Counted from the whole stretch's first letter, positions 37,799 through 52,597 are shown. The stretch: DNA of 63,192 nucleotides, filler included, from Octopus bimaculoides (GCF_001194135.2; 7 parts of 6 records of this genome joined end to end with filler, not necessarily neighbours in it), one strand, 5' to 3'. The notes: a model not told the origin generated them from the sequence alone. A program made the numbers and translations.

Positions 37799-37842
<44 letters not shown>

Positions 37843-39064
37843 TTATTTATATATACGTAACATAGATGTAAATGCAAATATATTTATATACATATGCAAA
37901 TATATGTAAATACATATTTTAATATACAAGTACACATGTATGGTCATTATCTATCTATCAATCAATCAATCTACCTTTTTATTCTGTAGATGTGATGATA
38001 TGCTACATATATATACATATATATATATATGTATATATATATATACATATAAGCAAAATATATGGCATCTTAATAATAAAAATATATGTCTGTCAGAGTA
38101 AGTATATGGTCTCTGTGTGTGTGTGTGTGTGTATATCGTTCTTATAGATATAATAGATATATAGATATATCGATAACTCACGGGGCCTGGTGTCGCTGTA
38201 GTAAGGAAGTTCCCTGGAAAAAAATGTAGTATCAATGGATATCATTCATATGAAATCTATCTATAGGATCTGATGTCTCTAGTGTGGCACACTCGATAGA
38301 AGGGACATATTACTAGATGGAGTATGAGAAAGAGATGGGGGTGAAAGAGTGGTAGTGTGAGAGAGAGGGTGAAGGGACAGAGGGACAGTATATAATGTGA
38401 GAGAGGGAGGAAAACAAGGTATAAGTGAGGGGGGGGGAGAACAAGGCGTAAGATGAGAGAGGGAGAAAAAGAAAGAGAATTAGAGAGAACATAGGAAAGA
38501 GAGAGAGAGAAAGGGAAATTTGAAGGAAGGGCTCGCAGGATGCGGAGAGGAAGGAGTGGCAAACGGCGAAGGGGTGAGAGTGGAAGCAGATAAATAGATA
38601 GATAGATAGAAGCGCGTGAAGAAAGAGAGGGAAGGATAGGACATGAAGAAGAAAAGGAAAGCTTGACGATTATATATATATATATACACTGAGAGAGAGA
38701 GAGAGAGAGAGAGAGNNNNNNNNNNNNNNNNNNNNNNNNNNNNNNNNNNNNNNNNNNNNNNNNNNNNNNNNNNNNNNNNNNNNNNNNNNNNNNNNNNNNN
38801 NNNNNNNNNNNNNNNNNNNNNNNNNNNNNNNNNNNNNNNNNNNNNNNNNNNNNNNNNNNNNNNNNNNNNNNNNNNNNNNNNNNNNNNNNNNNNNNNNNNN
38901 NNNNNNNNNNNNNNNNNNNNNNNNNNNNNNNNNNNNNNNNNNNNNNNNNNNNNNNNNNNNNNNNNNNNNNNNNNNNNNNNNNNNNNNNNNNNNNNNNNNN
39001 NNNNNNNNNNNNNNNNNNNNNNNNNNNNNNNNNNNNNNNNNNNNNNNNNNNNNNNNNNNNNNNN

Positions 39065-39096
<32 letters not shown>

Positions 39097-39673
39097 CAAA
39101 GGTGGAAGCAGGAACAATTGGGAAGATGTCTTGTCTTTTTATTTTTTATTTTAACTTTTGTCTATAGTAGCTTCTGTCTATAGATGTCGTTGTTTGTCTT
39201 TTCCTCTACTGCTGTTGCTGCGGATTCTGCTCTGACTGCTTGATGCAGTCATCAATTAATTCTTTCCCATTCGGTCACTTTTCGTTTGTGTTACGTCCTG
39301 GATGTGGTGGCGGTGGCGGTGGTGCTGTTAGTGGTGATGGTAGTGAGGGGGTGGGTTTTTTGCCCTTGGTCATTCCTGCTTGAGCAGGCTTTATTATTTA
39401 TGGTGAGAGACATTCCAACCGTGACCAACTTGTCATTTTTTCCAGTGTACAGAGAACCCAGCACCACCGTTATCCGGTAGGAATGTGATTTGAGGGAAAT
39501 TTTGTTTCCTATATCTAGCATGTCCAGAGACCACGTAGAGGTTCTCTTAGCGGTGGTGGTGATGGTCACCGTGGTGATTGGGGTGATGGTGGTGTTGGCG
39601 GTAGTGATGATGATGATAAGGAGGAGGAGGAGGTTCCTCATGAGGTGATCGAGATCAATTGCAATATAAATCT

Positions 39674-39709
<36 letters not shown>

Positions 39710-39711
<2 letters not shown>

Positions 39712-40045
39712 CGTTTCTGCTGTAGGCACATGGCCTGAAACTATGGGGGAGGGGGATAGTCGATTACATCGACCCCAGTCCTCAACTGGTACTTATTTTA
39801 TCGACCTCGAAAAAAGATGAAACGTAAAGTCGACATCGTCGGAATTTGAACTCAGAACATAATGTCAGACGAAAGAAATGCTCCTAAGCATTTCGCCCGG
39901 CGTGCTAATGATTCTGCCACTGGGGGACACTGTTGACTCCAGTATTTGAATGGTATTTTAATCTATCGACCCTAAAGATCAAAAGACGCAGTTGACCTTG
40001 GTGGGATTCGAACTCGCTAGTATCAAACGATTCAGCCAATCCACC
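39710..40045 (-). mobile_element. Family B SINE plus an adjacent degenerate copy
   Basis: GTCGATTACATCGACCCCAG..CTGGTACTTATTTTATCGAC..ATTTGAACTCAGAAC..GCATTTCGCCCGGCGTGCTAATGATTCTGCC. Confidence 0.75.
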
Positions 40046-40689
40046 ATCAGAAGAAGAAGAAGAAGAAGAAGAAGAAGAATGAGGAATTGAATTTCTTTTA
40101 TTTGCCACAAGGACTACATATGAGAGAACATTACATTGACAGATTACAAAATTGTGTCGAGTTTTACACATAAATTCAAAGAAAAGTTGGAAAAGAAAAG
40201 TGAAATTGAAAAGAAATTGAAAATGAAATTCTATACATTGTACAAAATTTTTTAATGTTCTTAGAAAAGGATATTGGCCTAAGAACAATCGAAGAATCCC
40301 ACTGATCCGATGTTACTATGGCAATCAATGGCATCAAAAGGACCAGCCTGCTCCCCTCTTTCCTCCTGTTCGGCGAGTACCNNNNNNNNNNNNNNNNNNN
40401 NNNNNNNNNNNNNNNNNNNNNNNNNNNNNNNNNNNNNNNNNNNNNNNNNNNNNNNNNNNNNNNNNNNNNNNNNNNNNNNNNNNNNNNNNNNNNNNNNNNN
40501 NNNNNNNNNNNNNNNNNNNNNNNNNNNNNNNNNNNNNNNNNNNNNNNGCACTTAAAAGATTTTGGTGCCCCCATAAAAGATTATGTAATTCAAAATATAA
40601 ACAATAACAAACCATAAAATAAATTTTCATTTTTCGAAACGAAACAAAACAATAGGGAAAATAATGTTTATTTTTGTATACTTCCACTT

Positions 40690-42340
40690 TATTTATATTT
40701 GAAAAGTTTCCTCAAAATTAATCTTAGGTAACACATCTGCATCTATACTTCGTAGAGATAAAAGCATCACGAATAATATTTTAGCAAATTTAAAGTAATA
40801 TATTTTGTGCCGTAAACCATTTACCATTTCTGTTGCGGCCCCTCCTTTCCTTGATGCCCTCAGCACGTGCTTATTTTGCTTAATGGTTAATGCAGCGCTG
40901 TCCTTGATAGTGTTACGAATCCCCAACTTTCACGACTGGGTGTCTTCCAGCCAGCGCCCAAATGCCAAAGACAAAGTAATACTGATTTAGTCAGGTATGT
41001 AGAAGTACAGTTCATAAGGCAGACCATGCTAACCCATCGATTTCTCTCTCACCAAGAGGAACGTTCGACACGTCCGCCACATCACAGAACTCCATCTCTC
41101 TGATCCAAAGTTGCAGCAGAACACCGAAATAGGCATCGAATTTTTACAGTCTTAGTCTGCTGTTTCTCGAGAACAGTCCACAAAGTGCTGCTCGAAAAAC
41201 TGTACATATTTGTTAAGTATCAGATAGCTCGCGTCTGATGCAATTTCCCAGGAATATACCATAATTTGTGAATCTACAGCTTCGCTGAACTCAGACATAC
41301 TGGCTGTTTGGGTCTTCAAATTAACTTCCTGTCTTTGCGTCCAAGGTTGAACAATGCATCCTCCATGTTTCGCATCGAAAAAATTGGCCAAGGGCCATTC
41401 TCGCCGTTAGCATGTCATTTGCGATGTCTCTTCCATGAAGCTCTTTTAAATGACTAAATTTATATTCTTTGCAGCTCATTCTTTAAGCTAACAGAATATA
41501 CTATAATTTTCCCCTTTAGAGGGCCCCATTTGCTGTTATTGATGATGGTCTGTCAATAACCACTTGATCAGTTCGCTAATCCTTGACATTTTTTCAAAAC
41601 GGAAAGAGACGTTCAGCTTCCTTGTCTAAGTTGACAGTATGTCGTCCGTGTAACCAACTATCCAAAAACTGTGAACAACTTACGCTAGGCCTTTCTACTA
41701 ACCTGACGAAAATTCTAATTACGATTTAAGTGATCTGATATGGTTTGTCTACGTCCACGTTAGTGCATTTGGGAAATCTAGATGAAGCCTGTCAGACACT
41801 ACTTGAGCAAGTTTACGAAGCTTTTATACCCACTCTTCCATTAGATTCTCTTCTCACACACAATCCTTGCGTTAATCCAAGATTCTATCCCAATTACTAT
41901 TTAATACTATTGAACAACTTATTCCTACAAACGTCGTTTAACGTCCATAGAAATCCGACTACCCAGTTGCTTTCGGTGCGTAGTCAGTTACAAAGTAACG
42001 TACATTTGTACCACCTATTCTCAGTGCGGCTATTCCAGGAGGATAAGAAACTATTTTAAAATTGTGTTTGGTATCACTTACCCTCCTCTTGAGTTAACCT
42101 GTTTTAGGAACTCTTGAAAGGGCCTTCCAACACACACGGGTCCAGGATATTTATTTAAAACCCTTACATGTGAGAAACGTTTGATAAGGGAGTCAAAGCA
42201 TTTTTTTCTTTTGTCTTTGAGGAGGCGTGATCATCAAAAGCTTCCACCTTTTTCAGAGATTTTAACCTCGTGTATTTGGACAAATTTCTCAACTCTTCGT
42301 TCTCCAGTTGAAGAAAGACGAGTTGAAGGATTCAATAATG
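40690..42340 (-). mobile_element. Decayed Tx1/L1-clade LINE fragment (AP endonuclease and reverse transcriptase remnants)
   Basis: Manual minus-strand translation near 42050-41700 gives ..RYFVTDYAPKATG*SDFYGR*TTFVGISCSIVLNSNWDRILD..DRLHLDFPNALTWT*TN, which is APE-like (VYAP, GDWN motifs). The RT catalytic-like GYTDD is at 41641-41655. A downstream RKGG..GLRHKIY segment follows. Many stops and large deletions. Confidence 0.65.
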
Positions 42341-42479
42341 GGTTGTTGCTGCTGTGGTAGCTTTTGTTTCTACTTTTCTTGTTGTTTTCTCTTTTCTTGT
42401 TGTGTCTGTTGTAGCTTCTTCTTCTTATTCTGCTGCTGCTGTTATCGTCGCCGTCGTATATAGGCTTGTTGTATATATA

Positions 42480-42663
42480 TTTTTATTCTTTTACTTGTTT
42501 GTCATTTAACTGCGGCCATGCTGGAGCACTGCCTTTAGTTGCGCAAATCGACCCCAGGACTTATTCTTTGTATTCTGTCGGTTCCTTTCGCCAAACTGCT
42601 AAGTTACGAGGACATAAACACACCAGCATTGGTTGTCAAGTGATGCTTAGGGGACAAACATAT

Positions 42664-42738
<75 letters not shown>

Positions 42739-42886
42739 CGACGGGCTTCTTTTAGTTTCCATCTACCAAATCCACTCACAAGGCTTTGGTCAGCCTGAGG
42801 CTATAGTAGAAGACACTTGCTCAAGGTGTCATGCAGTGGAATTGAACCTGGAACCATGTGGTTGATAAGCAAGCTATGTATATAAA

Positions 42887-42917
<31 letters not shown>

Positions 42918-43135
42918 TTTGTTCCCTCCCACCACCACCACTGCTTGACAATCAGTGCTGGTGTGTTTTTGTCCCAGTAACTTTGTGGTTCGGCAAAAGA
43001 GATCAATAGAATAAGTACCAGGCTTAAAAAAAAAAACTAAGTATTGGGGTTGATACAGCTGACTAAAAGCTCTTAAAGGCAATGCCCCAGTATGGCCACA
43101 GTCTCATGACTGAAACAAGTAAAATGGAAAAGATA
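42480..43135. mobile_element. Two SINE family A copies back to back: minus copy (about 42480-42875) and plus 3' half (about 42895-43135)
   Basis: Both segments match the family A pattern, in opposite orientations. Confidence 0.75.
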
Positions 43136-43164
43136 AAAGAGTCTTAATATTTTTAATGTAATCA

Positions 43165-43370
43165 AGGCAATGAGCTGGCAGAATCGTTAACACGCCGGGC
43201 AAAATGCTTAGTGGTATTTCGTCTGTTGTTACGTTCTGAGTTCAAATTCTGCCGAGGGCAACTTTGCCTTTCATTCTTTTGGGGTCGATAAATTAAGTAC
43301 CAGTTGAGCACTGGAGTTGATGTAATCGAGTTAATCCCTTTGTCTATTCTTGTTTGTCCCCTCTATGTTG
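43165..43370 (+). mobile_element. Family B SINE
   Basis: AAGGCAATGAGCTGGCAGAATCG..TGAGTTCAAATTC..GGGGTCGATAAATTAAGTACCAG. Confidence 0.8.
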
Positions 43371-43409
43371 AACAGTTCGCTAATTCTTGAAATTTGTGGT
43401 TCGGCAAAA

Positions 43410-43830
43410 GAGACCAGGCTCTAATCTGATTTGGCAGAGTTTCTACAGCTAGATGCCCTTCCTAACGCCAACCACTCTGAGAGTGTAGTGGGTGCTTTTA
43501 CGTGCCACCGGCACAAAGGCCAATCAGGAGGTACTGGCAACGGCCACACTCGAAATGGTGTATTTTACGTGCCACCTACACAGGAGCCAGTCCAGCGGTA
43601 CTGGCAATGAACTCGCTCGAATGTCTTTTCACGTGCCACCAGCACAAATGCCAGGAAGGCAACGTTGGTAATGATCACACTCAAATGGTGCTATTTACGT
43701 GCCACTGGCACGGAAACCACACAGCTGGTGTTCTGGCACGCTCGGACGGTGTTCTTAGTGATCTACTGGTATAGGTGCCATCACAATTTCACTTTCGCTT
43801 GCCCCAACAGGTCTTCGCAAGCCAAGTTTA
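43410..43830 (-). mobile_element. RTE LINE 3' UTR fragment with about 65-bp tandem subunits
   Basis: The right part (..CTTGCCCCAACAGGTCTTCGCAAG) is the reverse complement of the RTE 3' UTR at about 59880-59905. Four units start with TTTACGTGCCAC or a close variant. The left part matches the RTE tail. Confidence 0.75.
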
Positions 43831-44251
43831 GTGTTCAATGTAGAGATGGATATACATAACTTCTGTAATTTTCTATACGGTGTGTTTGTTCATTGGCTCT
43901 AATGTCAGCTCTGACATTTCAAACCTATTAACCCAATGGCAATACAACTGTAACCATCCCAACATATTTTAATAAGAATACATTATCCAGTGTTTATTTT
44001 CTTAATTTAAGATGGCATAAAGTAATTTGTTAAATATTTGGCTGCCATTTCTGAGAAATTGAGGTACAGTTGAAAAATACTGTCTGTAAAAGAACCATGC
44101 AATGTCTAGGTATTTGGTCAATAAGTGATATTTTGTTATTTTAGCCCATGTTAGCCTTCATACAGTTATACAACGAATCATAATGGCAACAAGGAATGCC
44201 AACAACTGCACCTCTTCACTCAAGTACTGACAAATGTGGAATACAAATATC

Positions 44252-44857
44252 GGATCTTTTTTAAAACGGGGGCCCACATTTTTCATTAACGAAACACTTT
44301 GAAACTTGGAACATTGGTAGAATGTGTCATATAAAACATCTTTTTCTCTTAGTCTTCTTAAAAAAAAAAGAAATCCATAAGTTATTCCATGTTAAAGTTG
44401 TCGTATTTCTGTAATTTCAACCAATCAGTGACGTCCATTCAGCCGATGTACATTAAGTGCCGACTACATAAACAAACGATTCTGAAACAATTCTATCGGT
44501 GATAGGGTTAGGGTTAGGGTTAGGGTAAAACAGCAAATTTAAAAAGAAAAAAGCAAATAAAACGAAGAAAAAAAAAAGAAAATGAAAAAAGCAAATTTAA
44601 AATGAAAAGAGCAAATAAAACGAAGCTATGGCTTAATCAGCCAAAGGAATAAATGTAAACAACTGAATACTTGTCAGTGATTGGTTGAAATTATCGAAAT
44701 AAGACAATTTTTTACATGAAATAAATTCGAATACAAAAATATTTTTCTGTTTTATAACACAAAATAGATAAGTATACGAAGTTTGAAAGTCTTTCGGTAC
44801 CAAAAACACTACGTAAAACATTAATGAAAAATGTGGCCCCCGTTTTAAAAAAGATCC
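44252..44857. mobile_element. 606-bp non-autonomous DNA transposon (MITE) with TIRs, 8-bp TSD and internal (TTAGGG)4
   Basis: The left end GGATCTTTTTTAAAACGGGGGCCCACATTTTTCATTAA mirrors the right end TTAATGAAAAATGTGGCCCCCGTTTTAAAAAAGATCC. CAAATATC flanks both ends (44244-44251 and 44858-44865). Imperfect inverted similarity extends about 200 bp inward. TAGGGT x4 lies at 44503-44526. Confidence 0.9.
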
Positions 44858-45627
44858 CAAATATCACCACACATTCACACATATACATATTGTCATCCTC
44901 TATACTGGCATAGGTTGAGTAGTTTGACTTATATCCACACACACACACACACACATACATATATATACATGTGAAGGGTTCCCTGTAGTTTCCATCTCCC
45001 AAATGACTTCAAATGGAATTGGTCAATTCAGTGCTACAGTAGAGCACACCCAAGGAAGGTATCACACAATAGCATCAAAACTCAAAATTCCTGCATTTTT
45101 TAAATAAAAGTCTGCTGAGGTGGGTTTGTGAAATGCAATTCTATATAAGGGGACAGTGAGCTACAAAAGGCTGGAAACCAATAACATAAATATCTAAGCT
45201 GATCATGGTAGGTTTGAACCCAATCTAGCTTAAACATAAGTCTGAGAACCTATATTATTTTCTGGTCAAAGTTAATACTTATGTTATATATCATTAATAT
45301 CAGAAGAACGAAGGAGGTGAGCTGGTGGAATCATTAACTCACTGGGAAAAATGCTTAACGAACTTGCTGGCCTTGTGCCAAAATTTGAAACTAACATCAA
45401 AAGCTTAGGGCCTTGTTCATCATATATTTAATCCAAAATTGTTAGTCCTACAAAATATATAGCCTAGCCTATAGCTCTTTAGAAACAAGATACATAACCA
45501 AAGCAAAATATATTTTGTCAGACTAACGATAATAGATTAAATGTTTATTCCCTGTTAGACTTATCCTTATTCTAAGGGGCTGGACATGGCTTTTTTTGAA
45601 CTTATCATCTCCTGGAATATATATATA

Positions 45628-45682
<55 letters not shown>

Positions 45683-46400
45683 NNNNNNNNNNNNNNNNNN
45701 NNNNNNNNNNNNNNNNNNNNNNNNNNNNNNNNNNNNNNNNNNNNNNNNNNNNNNNNNNNNNNNNNNNNNNNNNNNNNNNNNNNNNNNNNNNNNNNNNNNN
45801 NNNNNNNNNNNNNNNNNNNNNNNNNNNNNNNNNNNNNNNNNNNNNNNNNNNNNNNNNNNNNNNNNNNNNNNNNNNNNNNNNNNNNNNNNNNNNNNNNNNN
45901 NNNNNNNNNNNNNNNNNNNNNNNNNNNNNNNNNNNNNNNNNNNNNNNNNNNNNNNNNNNNNNNNNNNNNNNNNNNNNNNNNNNNNNNNNNNNNNNNNNNN
46001 NNNNNNNNNNNNNNNNNNNNNNNNNNNNNNNNNNNNNNNNNNNNNNNNNNNNNNNNNNNNNNNNNNNNNNNNNNNNNNNNNNNNNNNNNNNNNNNNNNNN
46101 NNNNNNNNNNNNNNNNNNNNNNNNNNNNNNNNNNNNNNNNNNNNNNNNNNNNNNNNNNNNNNNNNNNNNNNNNNNNNNNNNNNNNNNNNNNNNNNNNNNN
46201 NNNNNNNNNNNNNNNNNNNNNNNNNNNNNNNNNNNNNNNNNNNNNNNNNNNNNNNNNNNNNNNNNNNNNNNNNNNNNNNNNNNNNNNNNNNNNNNNNNNN
46301 NNNNNNNNNNNNNNNNNNNNNNNNNNNNNNNNNNNNNNNNNNNNNNNNNNNNNNNNNNNNNNNNNNNNNNNNNNNNNNNNNNNNNNNNNNNNNNNNNNNC

Positions 46401-46697
46401 CCACAGCGTGGCACCTTGGGCAAGTGTCTTCTGCTATAACCCCGGGCTGACCGAAGCCTTGTGATTGAATTTGGTAGGCGGAAGTTACTGCCGTGTGTGT
46501 ATACGTCTGTGTATGTACTTGTGCCTCTCTCCCAGAGAGTGAGAGGGGGAATATATATATATATATATATGATGGGCTTCTTTCAGTTTCCATCTACCAA
46601 ATCCATTCACAAGGGTTTGGTCAGCCTAAGGTGCCACGCAGTGGGACTGAACCTGGAACCATGTAGTTGAGAAACCAGCTTCTTACCACACAGCCAC
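46401..46697. mobile_element. SINE family A fragments: plus fragment (46401-46490) and minus head fragment (46570-46697)
   Basis: GTGGCACCTTGGGCAAGTGTCTTC on the plus strand; GGGACTGAACCTGGAACCATGT..CTTACCACACAGCCAC on the minus strand. Confidence 0.7.
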
Positions 46698-47266
46698 ACC
46701 TACATGTATATCTACGCTCAGTGAATTAAATTTATGCATTTAAACTAGTTGCTGATGTCGACACCAAACACCAATTACATGTGCAAGCAAATCACATGTG
46801 ACTGGTCTATGTGCATTAAAACTTGTATTAATTTACATACACTTGAGTGTGTACTTTAATATTAAGTTTACATACATTCCTTGAATGAAAGTACGTTTAT
46901 GTGTGCATATTAGTAGTTAAACTGCAAAAGAAAATATATAATAAAAACACTCCATAACCGTGAAAAGATTTCTGGATCAGTAAATAATATATATTTATAA
47001 ATAGAAAAATATATATTAAAATCATGTAATTTACATACATTCAAATATATATATATACCTATGTATATATGTGAGAAAGAATAAGTTCAAGTAGAACAAT
47101 TCAAACATTTTGGGGAGTCCGAAAAGAAATATTTCTAATAAATATTCATTATATCAAAATGATAGCCTGCTAAAGCAAGCAATTAAAATATGAAAATAAC
47201 AAGTAAAAAGTTTGTTATAGGCATGTATAAGATAAAATCTTATATAAAATATGCTACTAACAATTG

Positions 47267-47988
47267 TAAAAATGGATATGTTAAAAGTGAAAATTAGAAT
47301 TTAATTTCCACATACGACCGGTTCAAATGGCAATACAAACATGTAAGAAAGACCATTAATAGTGGTTGGCGTTAGGAAGGGCATCCAGCTGTAGAAACTC
47401 TGCCAAATCAGACTGGAGCCTGGTGTTGCCATCCGGTTTCACCAGTCCTCAGTCAAATCGTCCAACCCATGCTAGCATGGAAAGCGGACGTTAAACGATG
47501 ATGATGATGATGATGTTATGTATCACCATTTTCATTAGTGTAAAAAATTAAAGGAAAACATCAAAAAAAGGTATTGCCAAAAAAAAATTTAGAAGTAAAA
47601 ACAAATGGGCTATGTTGGAGAAGCTGACCGGATATTTGCAAATAAATTGTAAAAGGGGAAACAAGAAGAGAAACAGGGACTCGAAAATACATTAACATGT
47701 CCCCGTTTCTCTTCTTTTTGACCTTTTTACAATTTATTTGCAAATATCAGATCAGCTTCTCCAACATAGCCCATTTGTTTTTCCTTCTAAATTTTTTTTG
47801 GCAATACCTTTTTTGATGTGTTCCTTTAATTTTTTTACACTGACGAGAATGGTGATACATAACTATTTTAATTATTATTAATATAATTAATGGTTTTTTT
47901 TTCTTACATGTTTGTATTACCATTTGAACAGGTTGTATGTTGAAATTAAATTCTAATTTGAACTTTTAATATTTCTTCTCCATTTTTA
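47267..47988. repeat. Long inverted repeat (foldback) with an RTE-tail insertion in the left arm
   Basis: Inner arms 47515-47680 and 47699-47863 are reverse complements (about 90% by eye) around an 18-nt loop. Outer arms 47267-47361 and about 47890-47988 continue the symmetry. Confidence 0.9.
47362..47514 (+). mobile_element. RTE-type 3' tail fragment ending in (GAT)n
   Basis: GTGGTTGGCGTTAGGAAGGGCATCCAGC..GCTAGCATGGAAAGCGGACGTTAAACGATGATGAT; the same tail occurs at 53500-53540 and, inverted, at 43410-43500 and 56095-56280. Confidence 0.8.
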
Positions 47989-48044
47989 TCTGTCCTTCAC
48001 TGTGAAGGAAAAGGCTTTCGTTACCAAAAGTGGTAGAAGCTCCC

Positions 48045-48431
48045 ACTCTTTACTCTTTTACTTGTTTCAGTCATTTGACTGCAGCCATGCTGGAGCACCG
48101 CCTTTAGTCGAGCAAATCGACCCCAGGACTTATTCTTTGTAAGCCTAGTACTTATTCTATCGGTCTCTTTTGCTGAACCGCTAGGTGACGGGGACATAAA
48201 CACACCAGCATCGGTTGTCAAACAATGCTAGGGGGACAAATACAGACACACAAACACACACATATATACGACGGGCTTCTTTCAGTTTCCATCTATCAAA
48301 TCCACTCACAAGGCTTTGGTTGGCCCGAGGCTATAGTAGAAGACACTTGCCCAAGATGCCATGCAGTGGGACTGAACCCGGAACCATGTGGTTGGTAAGC
48401 AAGCTACTTACCACACAGCCACTCCTGCGCC
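48045..48431 (-). mobile_element. tRNA-derived SINE family A, near full length, 10 bp beyond the ALKBH1 3' TSD
   Basis: Reverse complement of the 50700-51140 copy along its whole length. Confidence 0.85.
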
Positions 48432-48446
48432 TAATTGTTAGTAGAG

Positions 48447-48463
48447 TTTTTTTTTTTTTTTTT
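48447..48463 (-). other. Genomic poly(A) tract (A17) ending the ALKBH1 retrocopy, preceded by the variant poly(A) signal GATAAA (48475-48480)
   Basis: T17 on the plus strand at 48447-48463, about 290 nt 3' of the ALKBH1 stop. GATAAA lies 11 nt upstream on the gene strand and AGTAAA lies near 48504-48509. Confidence 0.7.
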
Positions 48464-48756
48464 ATATATGAGACTTTATCTTATACATGCCTATAACGAA
48501 CTTTTTACTTATATACCTGTGTGTATGCATGTATGTATATGTGTGTATGCATGCATGTACGTGTTTGTGCACGTCTATGAAGGTGTGTGTGTGTGTGTGT
48601 TTTGAGATTGAGGTAACAATAAATAAAAAAGGTGATGTTATTTCACCTGACAGCGTGAGTAGGTGTATAAGTTACTGCAAAGTGGTTTCAAACTTCCAAA
48701 CAGTTGGAAACACATCAAGTATAACACAATTTTCTTTCCCTTCATGCAACTTATCA

Positions 48757-49905
48757 TCATTTTACTTCACTGTTTGTATGATCTGGGAAACTCTGCCCGA
48801 CTTTTAAAACTTGCCTCACACTAATATTTATTCTGCTCTCCTTCAAGAAGTTTTCGTAATTCTCCCAATGTAAAGAATTCAACGTAGTCACTATCTGTTT
48901 GTTTATTTTATCACAGTCCGGAGAGTTGATCAAACTAAGTCCTGAGTCTTCTCTCGAGTCCGGCGTGTTTTGATGTACAAACAAATTTAATTCCGCGAGC
49001 TCGTCAGCCATCCTTGCATTACACGAAGTTTCAAAATGTTTTGATGGAAGCAACCGGGGTACGGCATGATAGCACAGTCTTGAATCTCCGGCCATAATAC
49101 AAATATCACCAGATCGAAGATGAAAAGCTGCGGGCTTTACTGCTTTAGTTACCCCACCTAATAGGAAGATTGCGTCCTGACCAAAACTGAAAGAAATAAT
49201 TGGTGAGTTATGGTCAAACTCTGAGTGATCTGTGTGTCCAGCTAAAGTAGATCCCATATGGTAATAGTTTACTATAGCGGCCTCTGGATTATATTCTTTA
49301 AAACCGACCACAGAAGCGATGTATTTAGCCAAAATTTCTAGATCAAATGGAAATGTAGACACCTGGTCTTTGCTATACGTTTTATCGTTCCAGTTATAAT
49401 GGTAACCCAGTGTGACCCACCGAAGTTTATTTATATGAAATCTCATATCGAAAGATAGACTGTCGACAACACATTGTGCTTTACCGCTTTCGTAATTTTC
49501 GCTGGCTGTCCAGATATTGTCAGGCCGATTAATTCCACATTGCTTTTCGATAAAATCGAGATTAGTAACATTTTGTCTGGAAGGATAGTCGTGCAGACAT
49601 CGATGAGTCCAGTAACGCTGAGCAGCAGCTGTGAAAGGGTTACTGATAAACACAAACCCCGGACTTGTTTTATAATAATACACTTTCCATTCGTTCACCG
49701 GTCGTAAGCCGAACAGGTGTGGTTCAGTTTTCGTTGTTTCTGTCTGGTTAAAAGGAATGACATTACAGTTATTATTTGTAATTAGCTCATTAGTAAAATC
49801 AATTACCTCTGAAAAATCGGGAGGTGGTTCTTTTCGCTTATATCGCTTAAATTCTTCACGAAATACATCCGTACCTTCGTCGTCGTCTCTGTAGGTAGAA
49901 GCCAT
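48757..49905 (-). CDS. ALKBH1: Nucleic acid dioxygenase ALKBH1 (AlkB homolog 1), 382 aa, single uninterrupted ORF, probable retrogene
   Basis: The translation carries ALKBH1-specific motifs: N-terminal VFREEFKRYKRK..EVIDF, KLRWVTLGYHYNW, EAAIVNYY, the Fe-binding HxD in GHTDHSE, PIISFSFGQDAIFLLGG, LRSGDICIMAGDSR, the distal His in YHAVPR, and the 2OG-binding RxxxxxR in SRINISVRQV. The start context is TCAAA-ATG-G. The ORF ends in three consecutive stops, TGA TGA TAA (48751-48759). Confidence 0.96.
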   Translation of the reverse strand: MASTYRDDDEGTDVFREEFKRYKRKEPPPDFSEVIDFTNELITNNNCNVIPFNQTETTKTEPHLFGLRPVNEWKVYYYKTSPGFVFISNPFTAAAQRYWTHRCLHDYPSRQNVTNLDFIEKQCGINRPDNIWTASENYESGKAQCVVDSLSFDMRFHINKLRWVTLGYHYNWNDKTYSKDQVSTFPFDLEILAKYIASVVGFKEYNPEAAIVNYYHMGSTLAGHTDHSEFDHNSPIISFSFGQDAIFLLGGVTKAVKPAAFHLRSGDICIMAGDSRLCYHAVPRLLPSKHFETSCNARMADELAELNLFVHQNTPDSREDSGLSLINSPDCDKINKQIVTTLNSLHWENYENFLKESRINISVRQVLKVGQSFPDHTNSEVK

Positions 49906-50009
49906 TTTGAAATATGAATAGTAATTTCCCTTCGTTTAAAAATCTGTAGAGTTTTTGCCCTTGAGAAAAATTGCTATTATGAACACCACACACACACATA
50001 CGCACTCCT

Positions 50010-50165
50010 TCTTTCTCTTTCTCTCTCTCTCTTTCTTTCTCTTTCTCTCTCTCTCTTTCTCTCCCTCCCCTCTCTTCTCCTCCTCTCTCTCTCTTTTTCT
50101 CTCTCCTCCTCTCTTTCTCTCCCTGCCCCTCTCTTTTTCTCTCCTTCCCCCTCTCTTTCTCTTCC
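50010..50165 (+). repeat. Degenerate (CT)n tract just upstream of ALKBH1
   Basis: Read directly; GA-rich on the gene strand. Confidence 0.9.
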
Positions 50166-50699
50166 ACTGTATGACTCAAGGGTGAGAGTTCCGTGCATTT
50201 CGCCTATTGCTAAGTGCAATACACGAAACGTTGAGCCATTGACTCACTTATGTAACTTTCTGGCGACTTGTGTGTGTTGTGTGCAAACGTGTGTAGGAGG
50301 AGAGAGATTTATATGCAAAAGAATTAGACGTCTTAATACACATTTTAAAAGGCGCTTCTCTTGTGACTGCATTCTATAACATGAAAATCTATCCACGTTT
50401 AATTCAAGAGAAATTTATAGATTTATCAGGACCTCCGACCTATCACATAGAGCTCTGTTTTATTAACAGTAGATTGAAGCAAGGCAGCAAGTTGGCAGAA
50501 TCGTTACCACACTTGACAAAATGCTTGGTGGTACTTCTTCTGAATTCTATACGTTCTACGTTCGAGTGCCGCCGAGGTCGACTTCACCTTCCAAAGTCGT
50601 TGGTTATATGGGTTCTTTTTTTTTTTTTTTTGCATTCCCCCACCCTCGTAATTTAGCGGTTCAGCAAAAGATACCGATAAAATATGTACAAGTTGTATA

Positions 50700-50874
50700 G
50701 GTGCAGGAGTGGCTGCGTGGTAAGTAGCTTGCTTACCAACCGCATGGTTCCTGGTTCATTCCCACTGCGTGGCACCTTGGGTAAGTGTCTTCTACTATAG
50801 CCTCGGACCGACTAAAGCTTTGTGAGTGGATTTGGTAGACGGAAACTGAAAGAAGCCCGTCGTATATATGTATG

Positions 50875-50931
<57 letters not shown>

Positions 50932-51140
50932 GTTTGTGTGTGTGTTTGTCCCCACCAACATCGCTTGACAACCGATGGTGGCGTGTTTACGTCCCCGTAA
51001 GTTAGCGGTTCGGCACAAAAGACCGATAGAATAAGTACTAGGCTTCCAAAGAATAAGTCCTGGGGTCGGTTTGCTCGACTAAAGGTGGTACTCCAGCATG
51101 GCCGCAGTCAAGTGACTGAAACAAGTAAAAGAGAGTAGAG
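50700..51140 (+). mobile_element. tRNA-derived SINE family A, near full length
   Basis: The head has Pol III A-box-like TGGCTGCGTGG and B-box-like GGTTCATTCCC. It continues with GGCACCTTGGGTAAGTGTCTTC, an internal (TA)/(TG) microsatellite, and a tail ..GACTGAAACAAGTAAAAGAG. Many similar copies are in the window. Confidence 0.85.
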
Positions 51141-51359
51141 TTTAGCACTGTAAATCGACTGCACACTCCTTCGAAATTCCTAGCATTGTGTTAAAATTTG
51201 AAGCCACGAATAGTAATATAGTACACACGGTAACATAAGTAGCGTTTCATTTCCTGCTCGCATAAACATCAGAGGAAGATTTGTCTGTGCTAGTAACCCA
51301 TACTATAGTTTTGTTCAACCCTGTCACACTATATGAGGTGTATTGTAACAATGTAGACT

Positions 51360-52260
51360 GGTACAAGCATGGTAGTGTGGTTAAAAAGCTCTCTTTACAA
51401 CCACAAGGTTTCGGGTTCAGTCCCACAGCGTGACATTTTGAGCGAGTATCTTCTGCTATAGTCTTAAGCCTTGCAAATAAATTTTGTACGCCGAAACTGT
51501 AGGAGCGCGTCATTTGTATGACTTCGTGTTTGTGTTTATCTCCGTAACTGCTTCGTGTTGGTGTGTTTACGTCTTCGCAAAGTAGCAGTTCGGTTAAAAC
51601 TAAAAAATAAAGAATAATGATCAAATGATTAAATACCAGACTTCAAAGAAAAATCAGCCCTGGGCTCGATTCGTTCGACTAATATTCTTCAAGAAGGCAG
51701 CGAGCTGGCAGATTCGTTAGCACGCCGGGCGAAATGCTTAACGGTATTTCGTCTGCCGTTACGTTCTGAGTTCAAATTCCAGCGGAGGTCGACTTTGCAT
51801 TTTATCCATTTGGGGTCGATTAAATAAGTACCAGTTAATCACTGGGGGGTCGATGTAATCCACTTAATCATTTTGTCTGTCTTTGTTTGTCCTCTTTATG
51901 TTTAGCTTCCTGTAGGTAATAAAGAAATAAATATTCTTCAAGATGGTAGCCCAGTATGGCTGCAGTCTAATGTTAAAAATAAGTACGAGAAATGTGTGTG
52001 TGTGCGCGTGCATTACACACACACGCGACAGCTTCTTTCAGTTTCCCGAGGCTATAGTAGAAGGTACTTGCCCAAGATTTCACATTGTAGGAGTGAACCC
52101 GGAACCTTGTGGTTGGTAAGCAACCTACTTAACACACAGCCACGTATTTATGTTTGAGTTTGTACCCACTCACCGCTTGGTAACTGGTGTCGGTTTGTTG
52201 ATGTCCCTATAACATAGACATTCGGCAAAAGAAAGATCGATAAGTACCTGACATTAAAAA
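51360..52260. mobile_element. Cluster of degenerate family A SINE pieces, the first split by a family B SINE
   Basis: A degenerate head GTAGTGTGGTTAAAAAGC..GGGTTCAGTCCCAC lies near 51375. The tail resumes after 51943. Further head and body fragments lie at 52020-52260. Confidence 0.6.
51695..51929 (+). mobile_element. SINE family B (Nin/Deu-domain-like), full length with 14-bp TSD
   Basis: AGGCAGCGAGCTGGCAGA..TGAGTTCAAATTCC..GTCGACTTTGCATTTTATCC..GGGGTCGATTAAATAAGTACCAG..TAATAAAGAAATA. It is flanked by AATATTCTTCAAGA at 51681-51694 and 51930-51943. The central GTCGACTTTGCCTTTCATCC..AGTACCAG segment resembles the Deu/Nin domain (from recall). Confidence 0.85.
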
Positions 52261-52597
52261 TGTAATACAACCACGTTGACTATACATCTCCCTTAACTCT
52301 TTACGCATTTCGATTACTCAGTAATTACAATGCTATTCACATTGTGTTGAAGTTTCGATGATATATAATAGCATAGTTTTAGAATAACATTGAGCAGTAG
52401 GTGTAAAAAGACAGATCCGGTCGGCTTTGACATGAAACGGGTAAAATATTTTTGACCTGATATGACTGATTGAAATGCTAAAGGCTGAAATATGTGTGTC
52501 TGTGATTCTAGTGATAAAAACATAAGCTTCGTATCAAGAAACATAACTCTGCTTTGGCTAGAGTTATGTACCTTGACTGACTGGAGTTTACATTTGT

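What the first reader, a model, noticed from the sequence alone, without database searches (positions are those of the whole stretch)
48441..49956. Intact ALKBH1 retrogene that still shows its poly(A) tail and target-site duplication
Seen: a complete 382-aa intronless ALKBH1 ORF with all catalytic residues. About 290 nt after the stop come GATAAA and then A17. The A-run runs into AAAAACTCTAC, and the same 11-mer sits 40 nt upstream of the ATG. Known: vertebrate ALKBH1 is multi-exon, and intron loss, poly(A) and an A-starting TSD are the signature of target-primed reverse transcription of mRNA by L1-clade machinery. Inference: this is a fairly young retrocopy with an unbroken frame, so it is either a functional duplicate or a replacement of the parental locus. 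ALKBH1 modifies tRNA wobble positions (f5C/hm5C) and demethylates m1A/6mA, so an extra or relocated copy in an animal known for extensive RNA editing is notable.
Basis: partly seen in the sequence, partly recalled or inferred. Interest (0 to 1): 0.85.

Follow-up and report, generated by a model that had tools for sequence, protein, structure and literature searches.

The report
Ancient intronless ALKBH1 gene in octopus
This is the octopus's only ALKBH1 gene, an old retrogene shared by octopuses, Argonauta and a more distant cephalopod, and its apparent fresh poly(A) tail and target-site duplication are most likely look-alikes.

Summary

The window is Octopus bimaculoides. The gene lies antisense inside an SLC26 gene.

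Retrogene origin is supported. Haliotis, Pecten and a fish have six coding exons with introns at matching positions. Every cephalopod copy lacks all five introns, and no second cephalopod ALKBH1 was found.

"Young" is refuted. The same intronless gene occurs in O. vulgaris, O. sinensis, a third octopus, Argonauta (dS about 1.3, syntenic) and a sister cephalopod clade (dS saturated). dN/dS is 0.13-0.25.

The poly(A) and TSD reading fails on two counts.
- The 5' 11-mer sits inside a tandem upstream motif kept in all six cephalopod sequences.
- The A-run and the 3' 11-mer sit inside one arm of a 1.3-kb palindrome shared with O. vulgaris. The four arm copies point to an ancestral A8-9 plus CACTAC. 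A17 and the perfect match are O. bimaculoides-specific.

Verdict: an ancient retrogene that replaced its parent, of modest interest.

The parts
48757..49905 (-). Single-exon ALKBH1 coding sequence: 382 aa plus stop, with Fe(II)/2OG dioxygenase residues H224, D226, H280, R358 and R364
   Evidence: The identical protein is on O. bimaculoides chromosome CM046605.1. dN/dS is 0.13-0.25.
49946..49962 (-). Upstream motif unit 1, AAGGGCAAAAACTCTAC.
   Evidence: Alignment A5: AGGG..A.AACT is invariant in 3 Octopus species, Argonauta, L004 and L010. The pattern scan finds it at the equivalent place in every cephalopod locus.
49916..49932 (-). Upstream motif unit 2, AAGGGAAATTACTATTC. It is a tandem paralogue of unit 1, about 30 nt downstream, inside the supposed retrocopy.
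   Evidence: By my own count the two units match at about 20 of 28 positions in O. bimaculoides. Both units are present in all six cephalopod sequences.
48593..48756 (-). Proximal 3' flank or UTR. It is conserved with O. vulgaris and the third Octopus species and is followed by microsatellites (48513-48592).
48447..48463 (-). A17 run. It lies inside the gene-proximal palindrome arm.
   Evidence: The orthologous run is A9 in O. vulgaris. The distal arms carry A8 (O. vulgaris) and AAAATATG (O. bimaculoides).
48441..48451 (-).
   Evidence: The other three arm copies read CCACTAC, CACTAT and TGCTAC, so CTCTAC is best read as an O. bimaculoides-specific A-to-T change from CACTAC.
48476..48481 (-). 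GATAAA, a possible weak polyadenylation-signal variant. It is present in both palindrome arms.
   Evidence: Its function was not tested.
47196..48512 (.). Palindrome of about 1.3 kb centred near 47689 with an 18-nt loop. The distal arm is 47196-47680 and the proximal arm is 47699-48512. Both arms are interrupted by later SINE insertions.
   Evidence: The same structure is at L002 11549-12667 in O. vulgaris. Divergence between arms is K 0.16-0.20, against 0.11-0.13 between orthologous arms.
48046..48433 (-). tRNA-derived SINE inserted 8 nt beyond the 3' 11-mer. It is absent from O. vulgaris and therefore recent.
37799..53399 (+). Host gene: an SLC26-type anion transporter (807 aa; Sulfate_transp and STAS domains) on the opposite strand. 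The fetched locus lies entirely within that gene's span. That it is intron is inferred, because no SLC26 exon was mapped here.

Best explanation
This is the single functional ALKBH1 gene of Octopus bimaculoides, an Fe(II)/2-oxoglutarate nucleic-acid dioxygenase. It descends from an mRNA-derived copy that lost all five ancestral introns at once. That copy landed antisense within an SLC26 transporter gene and replaced the six-exon parent.

The event predates the Octopus-Argonauta split. It most likely happened in the stem of coleoid cephalopods (octopuses, squids and cuttlefish). The gene has been under purifying selection since.

The A17 run and the flanking AAAAACTCTAC pair are not the original poly(A) tail and target-site duplication.
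- The upstream copy is part of a conserved, tandemly duplicated upstream motif. I infer it is a promoter or 5'-UTR element.
- The downstream copy and the A-run are internal features of a much younger palindromic duplication.
- The perfect match and the long A-run arose in the O. bimaculoides lineage, by one A-to-T change and by slippage.

Shown: gene identity, intron loss, phylogenetic spread, selection, motif conservation, and the palindrome with its four arm states. Inferred: retroposition as the mechanism, loss of the parent, and promoter function for the motif.
For: Identity and integrity:
- Pfam and PDB matches, with catalytic residues present.

Intron loss:
- Haliotis asinina, Pecten maximus and the fish Megalops each have 6 coding exons. 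Their introns map to O. bimaculoides residues about 47-57, 83, 140-149, 175 and 239.
- The coding sequence is uninterrupted in O. bimaculoides, O. vulgaris, Argonauta hians and L004.
- It is also uninterrupted in a third Octopus species and in L010.

Age:
- dS is 0.10 to O. vulgaris, 0.23 to the third species, 1.2-1.4 to Argonauta, and saturated to L004 and L010.
- L004 and L010 form the sister clade to the octopods in a neighbour-joining tree.
- O. vulgaris is collinear over about 11 kb.
- Argonauta shares a conserved non-coding block of about 170 bp, roughly 90% identical over its core, on the same side of the gene and in the same orientation. It also shares the upstream motif.

Sole copy:
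- Only one cephalopod ALKBH1 cluster per species appears among the best 120 hits.

New setting:
- The gene is nested antisense in SLC26 in octopus. No overlapping host gene is called around the Haliotis, Pecten, Megalops or Capitella genes.

Selection:
- dN/dS is 0.13-0.25.

The hallmarks are not original:
- Motif conservation.
- The palindrome in two species.
- The four-arm alignment.
- Arm divergence about one seventh of the Octopus-Argonauta dS.
- The ancestral 10 of 11 match has a chance probability of roughly 0.4-1.6% per locus.
Against: - An exact 11-mer flanking an intronless gene at exactly the expected positions has a chance probability of only about 1e-3. Coincidence is therefore not comfortable.
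- Even the reconstructed ancestral state matches 10 of 11.
- The ancestral state rests on four copies from two species.
- The taxon of L004 and L010 was not verified. It is inferred to be a non-octopod cephalopod from the tree and the shared motif.
- Loss of the parent rests on annotated proteomes, not on a whole-genome tblastn.
- No transcript-end data were available, so the real 5' and 3' ends of the mRNA are unknown.
- Whether the palindrome is a transposable element or a local inverted duplication is unresolved.
Confidence: 0.62

Rival explanations
1. This is a fairly young L1-type processed retrocopy whose A17 is the original poly(A) tail and whose AAAAACTCTAC pair is the original target-site duplication.
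For: All the hallmarks sit at the expected positions, and the exact 11-mer is improbable by chance. GATAAA lies 12 nt before the A-run.
Against: - The same intronless gene sits at the same locus in O. vulgaris, and in Argonauta at dS about 1.3.
- It is also intronless in a deeper clade.
- The 5' copy lies inside a motif homologous across all of these sequences, so it cannot be target DNA duplicated in the Octopus lineage.
- A17 and CTCTAC are specific to O. bimaculoides.
Confidence: 0.03
2. This is an ancient retrogene, and the A-run and direct repeat are true relics of the original insertion. They survived by luck or by selection, for example as part of the promoter and of the 3'-end processing region. 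They were later copied into the palindrome.
For: - The positions are exactly as target-primed reverse transcription (the L1-type insertion mechanism) predicts.
- The ancestral state is still 10 of 11.
- The 5' copy is under constraint.
- A-runs can persist by slippage.
Against: - With about 0.65 substitutions per neutral site per lineage since the Argonauta split, I estimate survival of both copies at about 1%.
- If the insertion dates to the coleoid ancestor, where dS is saturated, I estimate survival at about 1e-4 or less. The shared two-unit motif in L004 and L010 implies that older date.
- The 3' copy is visibly unconstrained, since it differs in O. vulgaris and in both distal arms.
- Unit 1 has a tandem paralogue inside the 'retrocopy', which a target-derived sequence should not have.
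Confidence: 0.12
3. The gene did not move by retroposition. The introns were lost at the original locus, either stepwise or by recombination with a cDNA, and the SLC26 setting reflects ordinary genome rearrangement.
For: - No reliable poly(A) tail or TSD remains.
- From general knowledge, cephalopod genomes are heavily rearranged, so lost synteny with gastropods and bivalves is weak evidence of a move.
- Recombination with a cDNA also removes all introns at once.
Against: - All five conserved introns are missing in every cephalopod copy, with no intermediate seen.
- The gene is nested antisense within an unrelated gene. This is a common landing place for retrocopies.
- No host gene overlaps ALKBH1 in the four outgroups examined.
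Confidence: 0.15

Closest known systems
Retrogene replacement ('orphan retrogenes'), for example amphioxus SYCP1 (PMC5803294)
   Same: A single-exon mRNA-derived copy takes over, and the multi-exon parent is lost. The copy depends on regulatory sequence at the new site. Here a conserved tandem upstream motif plays the part of the acquired regulatory region.
   Different: The gene family and the lineage differ. Here the event is inferred from gene structure and phylogenetic spread only. No remnant of the parent and no reliable insertion hallmarks remain. Literature searches found no report of it.
Canonical animal ALKBH1 (six coding exons; solved structures 6ie2 and 6l94)
   Same: The 2OG-FeII_Oxy_2 fold signature, the HxD...H iron triad, the RxxxxxR 2-oxoglutarate motif and full-length collinearity. 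About 40% identity to vertebrate proteins and 41-45% to mollusc proteins.
   Different: No introns. A divergent stretch between the catalytic core and the C-terminal motif. Nested antisense in an SLC26 gene.
Young LINE-mediated processed retrocopies, as in mammals, with a poly(A) tail and 7-20 bp TSDs
   Same: An intronless copy, an A-run about 290 nt after the stop, and an 11-bp direct repeat that starts with A's on both sides.
   Different: The copy is not lineage-specific, and no empty site or parent was found. The repeat copies lie inside a conserved motif and inside a palindrome arm. The perfect match is a derived state.

Membership tests
ALKBH1 (AlkB-family Fe(II)/2-oxoglutarate dioxygenase) | 2OG-FeII_Oxy_2 catalytic domain | tested here: met
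   PF13532, E=6.2e-37, 128 bits against a cut-off of 31
ALKBH1 (AlkB-family Fe(II)/2-oxoglutarate dioxygenase) | HxD...H iron triad and RxxxxxR 2-oxoglutarate-binding motif | tested here: met
   H224, D226, H280, R358 and R364 align with the corresponding residues of the solved ALKBH1 chain
ALKBH1 (AlkB-family Fe(II)/2-oxoglutarate dioxygenase) | Closer to ALKBH1 than to other AlkB homologues | tested here: met
   PDB ALKBH1 E=5e-70 against AlkB at about 2e-15. The named database hits are nearly all called ALKBH1 or an equivalent. The gene groups with mollusc ALKBH1 in the tree.
ALKBH1 (AlkB-family Fe(II)/2-oxoglutarate dioxygenase) | Demethylase or oxidase activity on tRNA or DNA substrates | not testable with these tools
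   Needs enzyme assays
Processed retrogene | Lacks all introns that the ancestral gene had | tested here: met
   Five introns at matching positions in Haliotis, Pecten and Megalops, and none in six cephalopod sequences
Processed retrogene | Lies at a locus unrelated to the parental one | tested here: inconclusive
   Nested antisense in SLC26 in octopus. No host gene overlaps ALKBH1 in four outgroups. The ancestral neighbours were not compared.
Processed retrogene | Poly(A) tail at the 3' end of the copied mRNA | tested here: inconclusive
   The A17 run exists, but it is internal to a duplicated palindrome arm. It is A9, A8 or AAAATATG in the other three arm copies. No transcript 3' ends were available.
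Processed retrogene | Target-site duplication that bounds the insert | tested here: not met
   The 5' copy lies within a motif homologous in all cephalopods and has a tandem paralogue inside the 'insert'. The 3' copy reconstructs to CACTAC, not CTCTAC.
Young, lineage-specific retrocopy | Absent (empty site) in related species, with an intron-bearing parent still present | tested here: not met
   Present and intronless in O. vulgaris, O. sinensis, a third Octopus species, Argonauta, L004 and L010. No second copy among the best 120 hits.
Retrogene replacement (orphan retrogene) | The retrogene is the only copy and is under purifying selection | tested here: met
   One ALKBH1 cluster per cephalopod in the annotated proteomes. 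dN/dS is 0.13-0.25. No whole-genome tblastn was done.

The most novel reading that the evidence does not exclude
Coleoid cephalopods as a group replaced the ancestral six-exon ALKBH1 with one retrogene nested antisense in an SLC26 gene. By this reading it has run for a very long time on a tandemly duplicated upstream element (AAGGGnAAnAACT, two copies) that arose or was recruited at the new site. A speculative addition: a 1.3-kb palindrome just downstream would fold into a long double-stranded RNA in any read-through transcript.
Probability: 0.55. Interest if true: 0.35.

Novelty: new member of a known kind. Interest (0 to 1): 0.3.

Why it matters
It adds a clean case of retrogene replacement in a housekeeping nucleic-acid modification enzyme, shared across a major animal group. 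It gives a small conserved upstream motif that could be tested as a recruited promoter.

It is also a cautionary example. An A-run with an 11-bp flanking repeat around an intronless gene looked like a fresh retrocopy. Comparison with relatives shows the look is secondary.

It does not point to new biology of ALKBH1 or of RNA editing.

Tried and rejected
- Rfam and tRNA scans of the piece found nothing.
- I first read the Argonauta 3' flank ...AAAGAGATTTCTCTATTAGTCAC as a decayed A-run plus CTCTAC. The string AGATTTCTCTATTAG recurs in the Argonauta 5' flank and again further 3'. It looks like the end of a repeated, probably SINE-type, element, so I dropped that reading.
- I hoped the Logan contigs L007-L009 and L010 were transcripts that would give the mRNA ends. 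L007-L009 start and stop in microsatellites, and L010 has no poly(A). They cannot be used for that.
- I searched the opposite-strand ORFs of L004 for SLC26 exons to test deep synteny. There was no Pfam hit, which is inconclusive.
- A greedy chaining script for flank divergence failed. I used the collinear blocks instead, which are 80-91% identical.
- Paper searches for 'retrogene octopus', 'ALKBH1 intronless' and the run accessions found no prior report and did not identify the samples.
- The upstream motif did not match any transcription-factor site I could recall. No motif-library search was possible.

Full report
**1. What is in the sequence**

- ORF: 48757-49905 on the minus strand, 382 aa.
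- A-run: T17 on the plus strand at 48447-48463, which is A17 on the gene strand, 293 nt after the stop.
- GATAAA: 48476-48481, 12 nt before the A-run.
- 11-mer: AAAAACTCTAC at 48441-48451 and 49946-49956. The upstream copy ends 40 nt before the ATG.

The protein is ALKBH1.
- Pfam 2OG-FeII_Oxy_2 matches at E=6e-37.
- Solved ALKBH1 structures match at E=5e-70, against about 2e-15 for AlkB.
- H224, D226, H280, R358 and R364 are in place.

The exact 11-mer occurs only at these two sites in the window. From about 80 kb of octopus non-coding DNA, I estimate about 1.2e-3 for an exact match of A5 plus a 6-mer within 200 nt. The figure is about 8e-3 with one mismatch allowed.

**2. Where it comes from**

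The identical protein is encoded on Octopus bimaculoides chromosome CM046605.1 (assembly GCA_001194135.2). It lies on the strand opposite an 807-aa SLC26-type transporter gene whose span covers the whole fetched locus.

**3. Retrogene origin**

Haliotis asinina, Pecten maximus and the fish Megalops cyprinoides all have six coding exons. Their five introns map to the same places, at O. bimaculoides residues about 47-57, 83, 140-149, 175 and 239.

The coding sequence is uninterrupted in every cephalopod copy examined.
- O. bimaculoides and O. vulgaris (94% amino-acid identity).
- O. sinensis, which falls in the same 90% cluster.
- A third Octopus-like species, from Logan contigs.
- Argonauta hians (70% identity).
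- A 215-kb ENA contig (L004) and a Logan contig (L010).

In a neighbour-joining tree, L004 and L010 are sister to the octopods. They are probably squid or cuttlefish relatives, but the taxon was not verified.

Only one cephalopod ALKBH1 cluster appears among the best 120 hits. None of the four outgroup genes is overlapped by a host gene.

Together these results fit retroposition followed by loss of the parent:
- all five conserved introns are missing at once;
- the genomic setting is new;
- no parental copy is found.

This is retrogene replacement, as described for amphioxus SYCP1 (PMC5803294).

**4. Age and constraint**

| Comparison with O. bimaculoides | dS |
|---|---|
| O. vulgaris | 0.10 |
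| Third Octopus species | 0.23 |
| Argonauta | 1.2-1.4 |
| L004 and L010 | saturated |

dN/dS is 0.13-0.25 throughout.

O. vulgaris is collinear across the piece. Argonauta shares two things with octopus beyond the gene itself:
- the upstream region;
- a conserved non-coding block of about 170 bp, roughly 90% identical over its core (window 38140-38320 and L003 15324-15522). It lies on the same side of the gene and in the same orientation, and it has no other copy in about 130 kb of fetched sequence.

The insertion therefore predates the Octopus-Argonauta split. The gene is not young.

**5. The 5' 'TSD'**

I aligned the 110 nt upstream of the ATG from the six cephalopod sequences. There are two tandem units of one motif.
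- Unit 1: TCAAGGGCAAAAACTCTAC in octopus.
- Unit 2: CGAAGGGAAATTACTATTC in octopus.
- The core AGGG..A.AACT is invariant.

The pattern is found at the equivalent place in every cephalopod locus, with only three other hits in all the fetched loci.

A target-site duplication made in the Octopus lineage cannot be homologous to sequence in Argonauta and the deeper clade. It also should not have a tandem paralogue inside the insert. If the duplication dates to the coleoid ancestor instead, the neutral 3' copy could not have survived saturated divergence.

**6. The A-run and the 3' 'TSD'**

The last 50 nt before the A-run, the A-run itself, the 11-mer and about 430 nt beyond it are repeated in inverted orientation 1.2 kb away.
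- The structure is a palindrome at 47196-48512, centred near 47689.
- It is interrupted by later SINE insertions.
- O. vulgaris has the same structure.

The four arm copies at the site read as follows.

| Arm | Sequence at the site |
|---|---|
| O. bimaculoides, proximal | ATATAT-A17-CTCTAC-TAAC |
| O. vulgaris, proximal | ATATAT-A9-CCACTAC-TAAC |
| O. bimaculoides, distal | ATAT-AAAATATG-CTAC-TAAC |
| O. vulgaris, distal | ATAT-A8-CACTAT-TAAC |

The simplest ancestor is A8-9 followed by CACTAC. On that reading, A17 is an O. bimaculoides expansion, and CTCTAC is an O. bimaculoides A-to-T change that turned a 10 of 11 match into 11 of 11.

Divergence between the arms is K 0.16-0.20, against 0.11-0.13 for orthologous arms between the species. 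The palindrome therefore formed shortly before the two species split, and long after the split from Argonauta.

**7. Weighing chance against relic**

The ancestral 10 of 11 match has a chance probability of about 0.4-1.6% per locus. Survival of a true duplication since before the Argonauta split is about 1% by my estimate, using about 0.65 neutral substitutions per site per lineage. Survival since the coleoid ancestor is about 1e-4 or less.

The motif evidence implies the older date, and this locus was picked out of a genome scan. Coincidence is therefore the better reading, although it is not proven.

**8. Verdict**

- Retrogene origin and replacement of the parent are supported.
- Youth and preserved insertion hallmarks are not supported.
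- No link to RNA editing is shown.
- This is a new member of a known kind, of modest interest.

Noticed in passing
window 38140-38320; L003 15324-15522: A non-coding block of about 170 bp is roughly 90% identical over its core between O. bimaculoides and Argonauta hians, while synonymous sites in the neighbouring gene are near saturation. The indels are not multiples of three. There is no Rfam match and no other copy in about 130 kb of fetched sequence. It could be an enhancer or an undescribed RNA within the SLC26 gene.
   Followed up: partly
window 47196-48512; L002 11549-12667: A 1.3-kb palindrome with arms of about 480 nt, an 18-nt loop and arm identity of 82-86%. It is shared by two Octopus species and was later hit by SINEs. 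It could be a foldback transposon or a local inverted duplication. Any transcript through it, including the SLC26 pre-mRNA, would form a long hairpin.
   Followed up: partly
window 49916-49962; equivalent places in L002, L003, L004, L007-L010: A tandemly duplicated upstream motif, AAGGGnAAnAACT, is kept in all six cephalopod ALKBH1 loci. It was not evident in the sequence read upstream of the Haliotis or Pecten start codons. It matched no transcription-factor site I could recall.
   Followed up: partly
L002 11342-11539: O. vulgaris carries an insertion of about 200 bp with 31-nt terminal inverted repeats (GCTAGCTAGTCGTAAGTAGTCGATCCTACAA), like a miniature inverted-repeat transposon. It lies in the 3' flank of ALKBH1 and is absent from O. 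bimaculoides.
   Followed up: no
window 48046-48433, 42480-42876, 50697-51133, 52600-52864 and others: Many copies of one tRNA-derived SINE family lie on both strands. The copy at 48046-48433 is specific to O. bimaculoides. A second SINE type with a (GAT)n tail at 47352-47514 also has relatives in Argonauta.
   Followed up: no
L003, opposite strand to ALKBH1 (exact position not mapped): A long ORF in Argonauta carries a reverse-transcriptase YVDD motif and, by my reading, a GIY-YIG-like tail. This may be a Penelope-like retroelement. It was not checked against Pfam.
   Followed up: no
window 50003-50170: A long (TC)n/(AG)n microsatellite followed by (TG)n lies just upstream of the gene. It is present at the same place in O. 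bimaculoides and the third Octopus species and is much shorter in O. vulgaris.
   Followed up: no
window about 38330-39060, 40382-40547, 45683-46399: Runs of N (assembly gaps) lie inside the piece. ORFs listed across them are artefacts.
   Followed up: no
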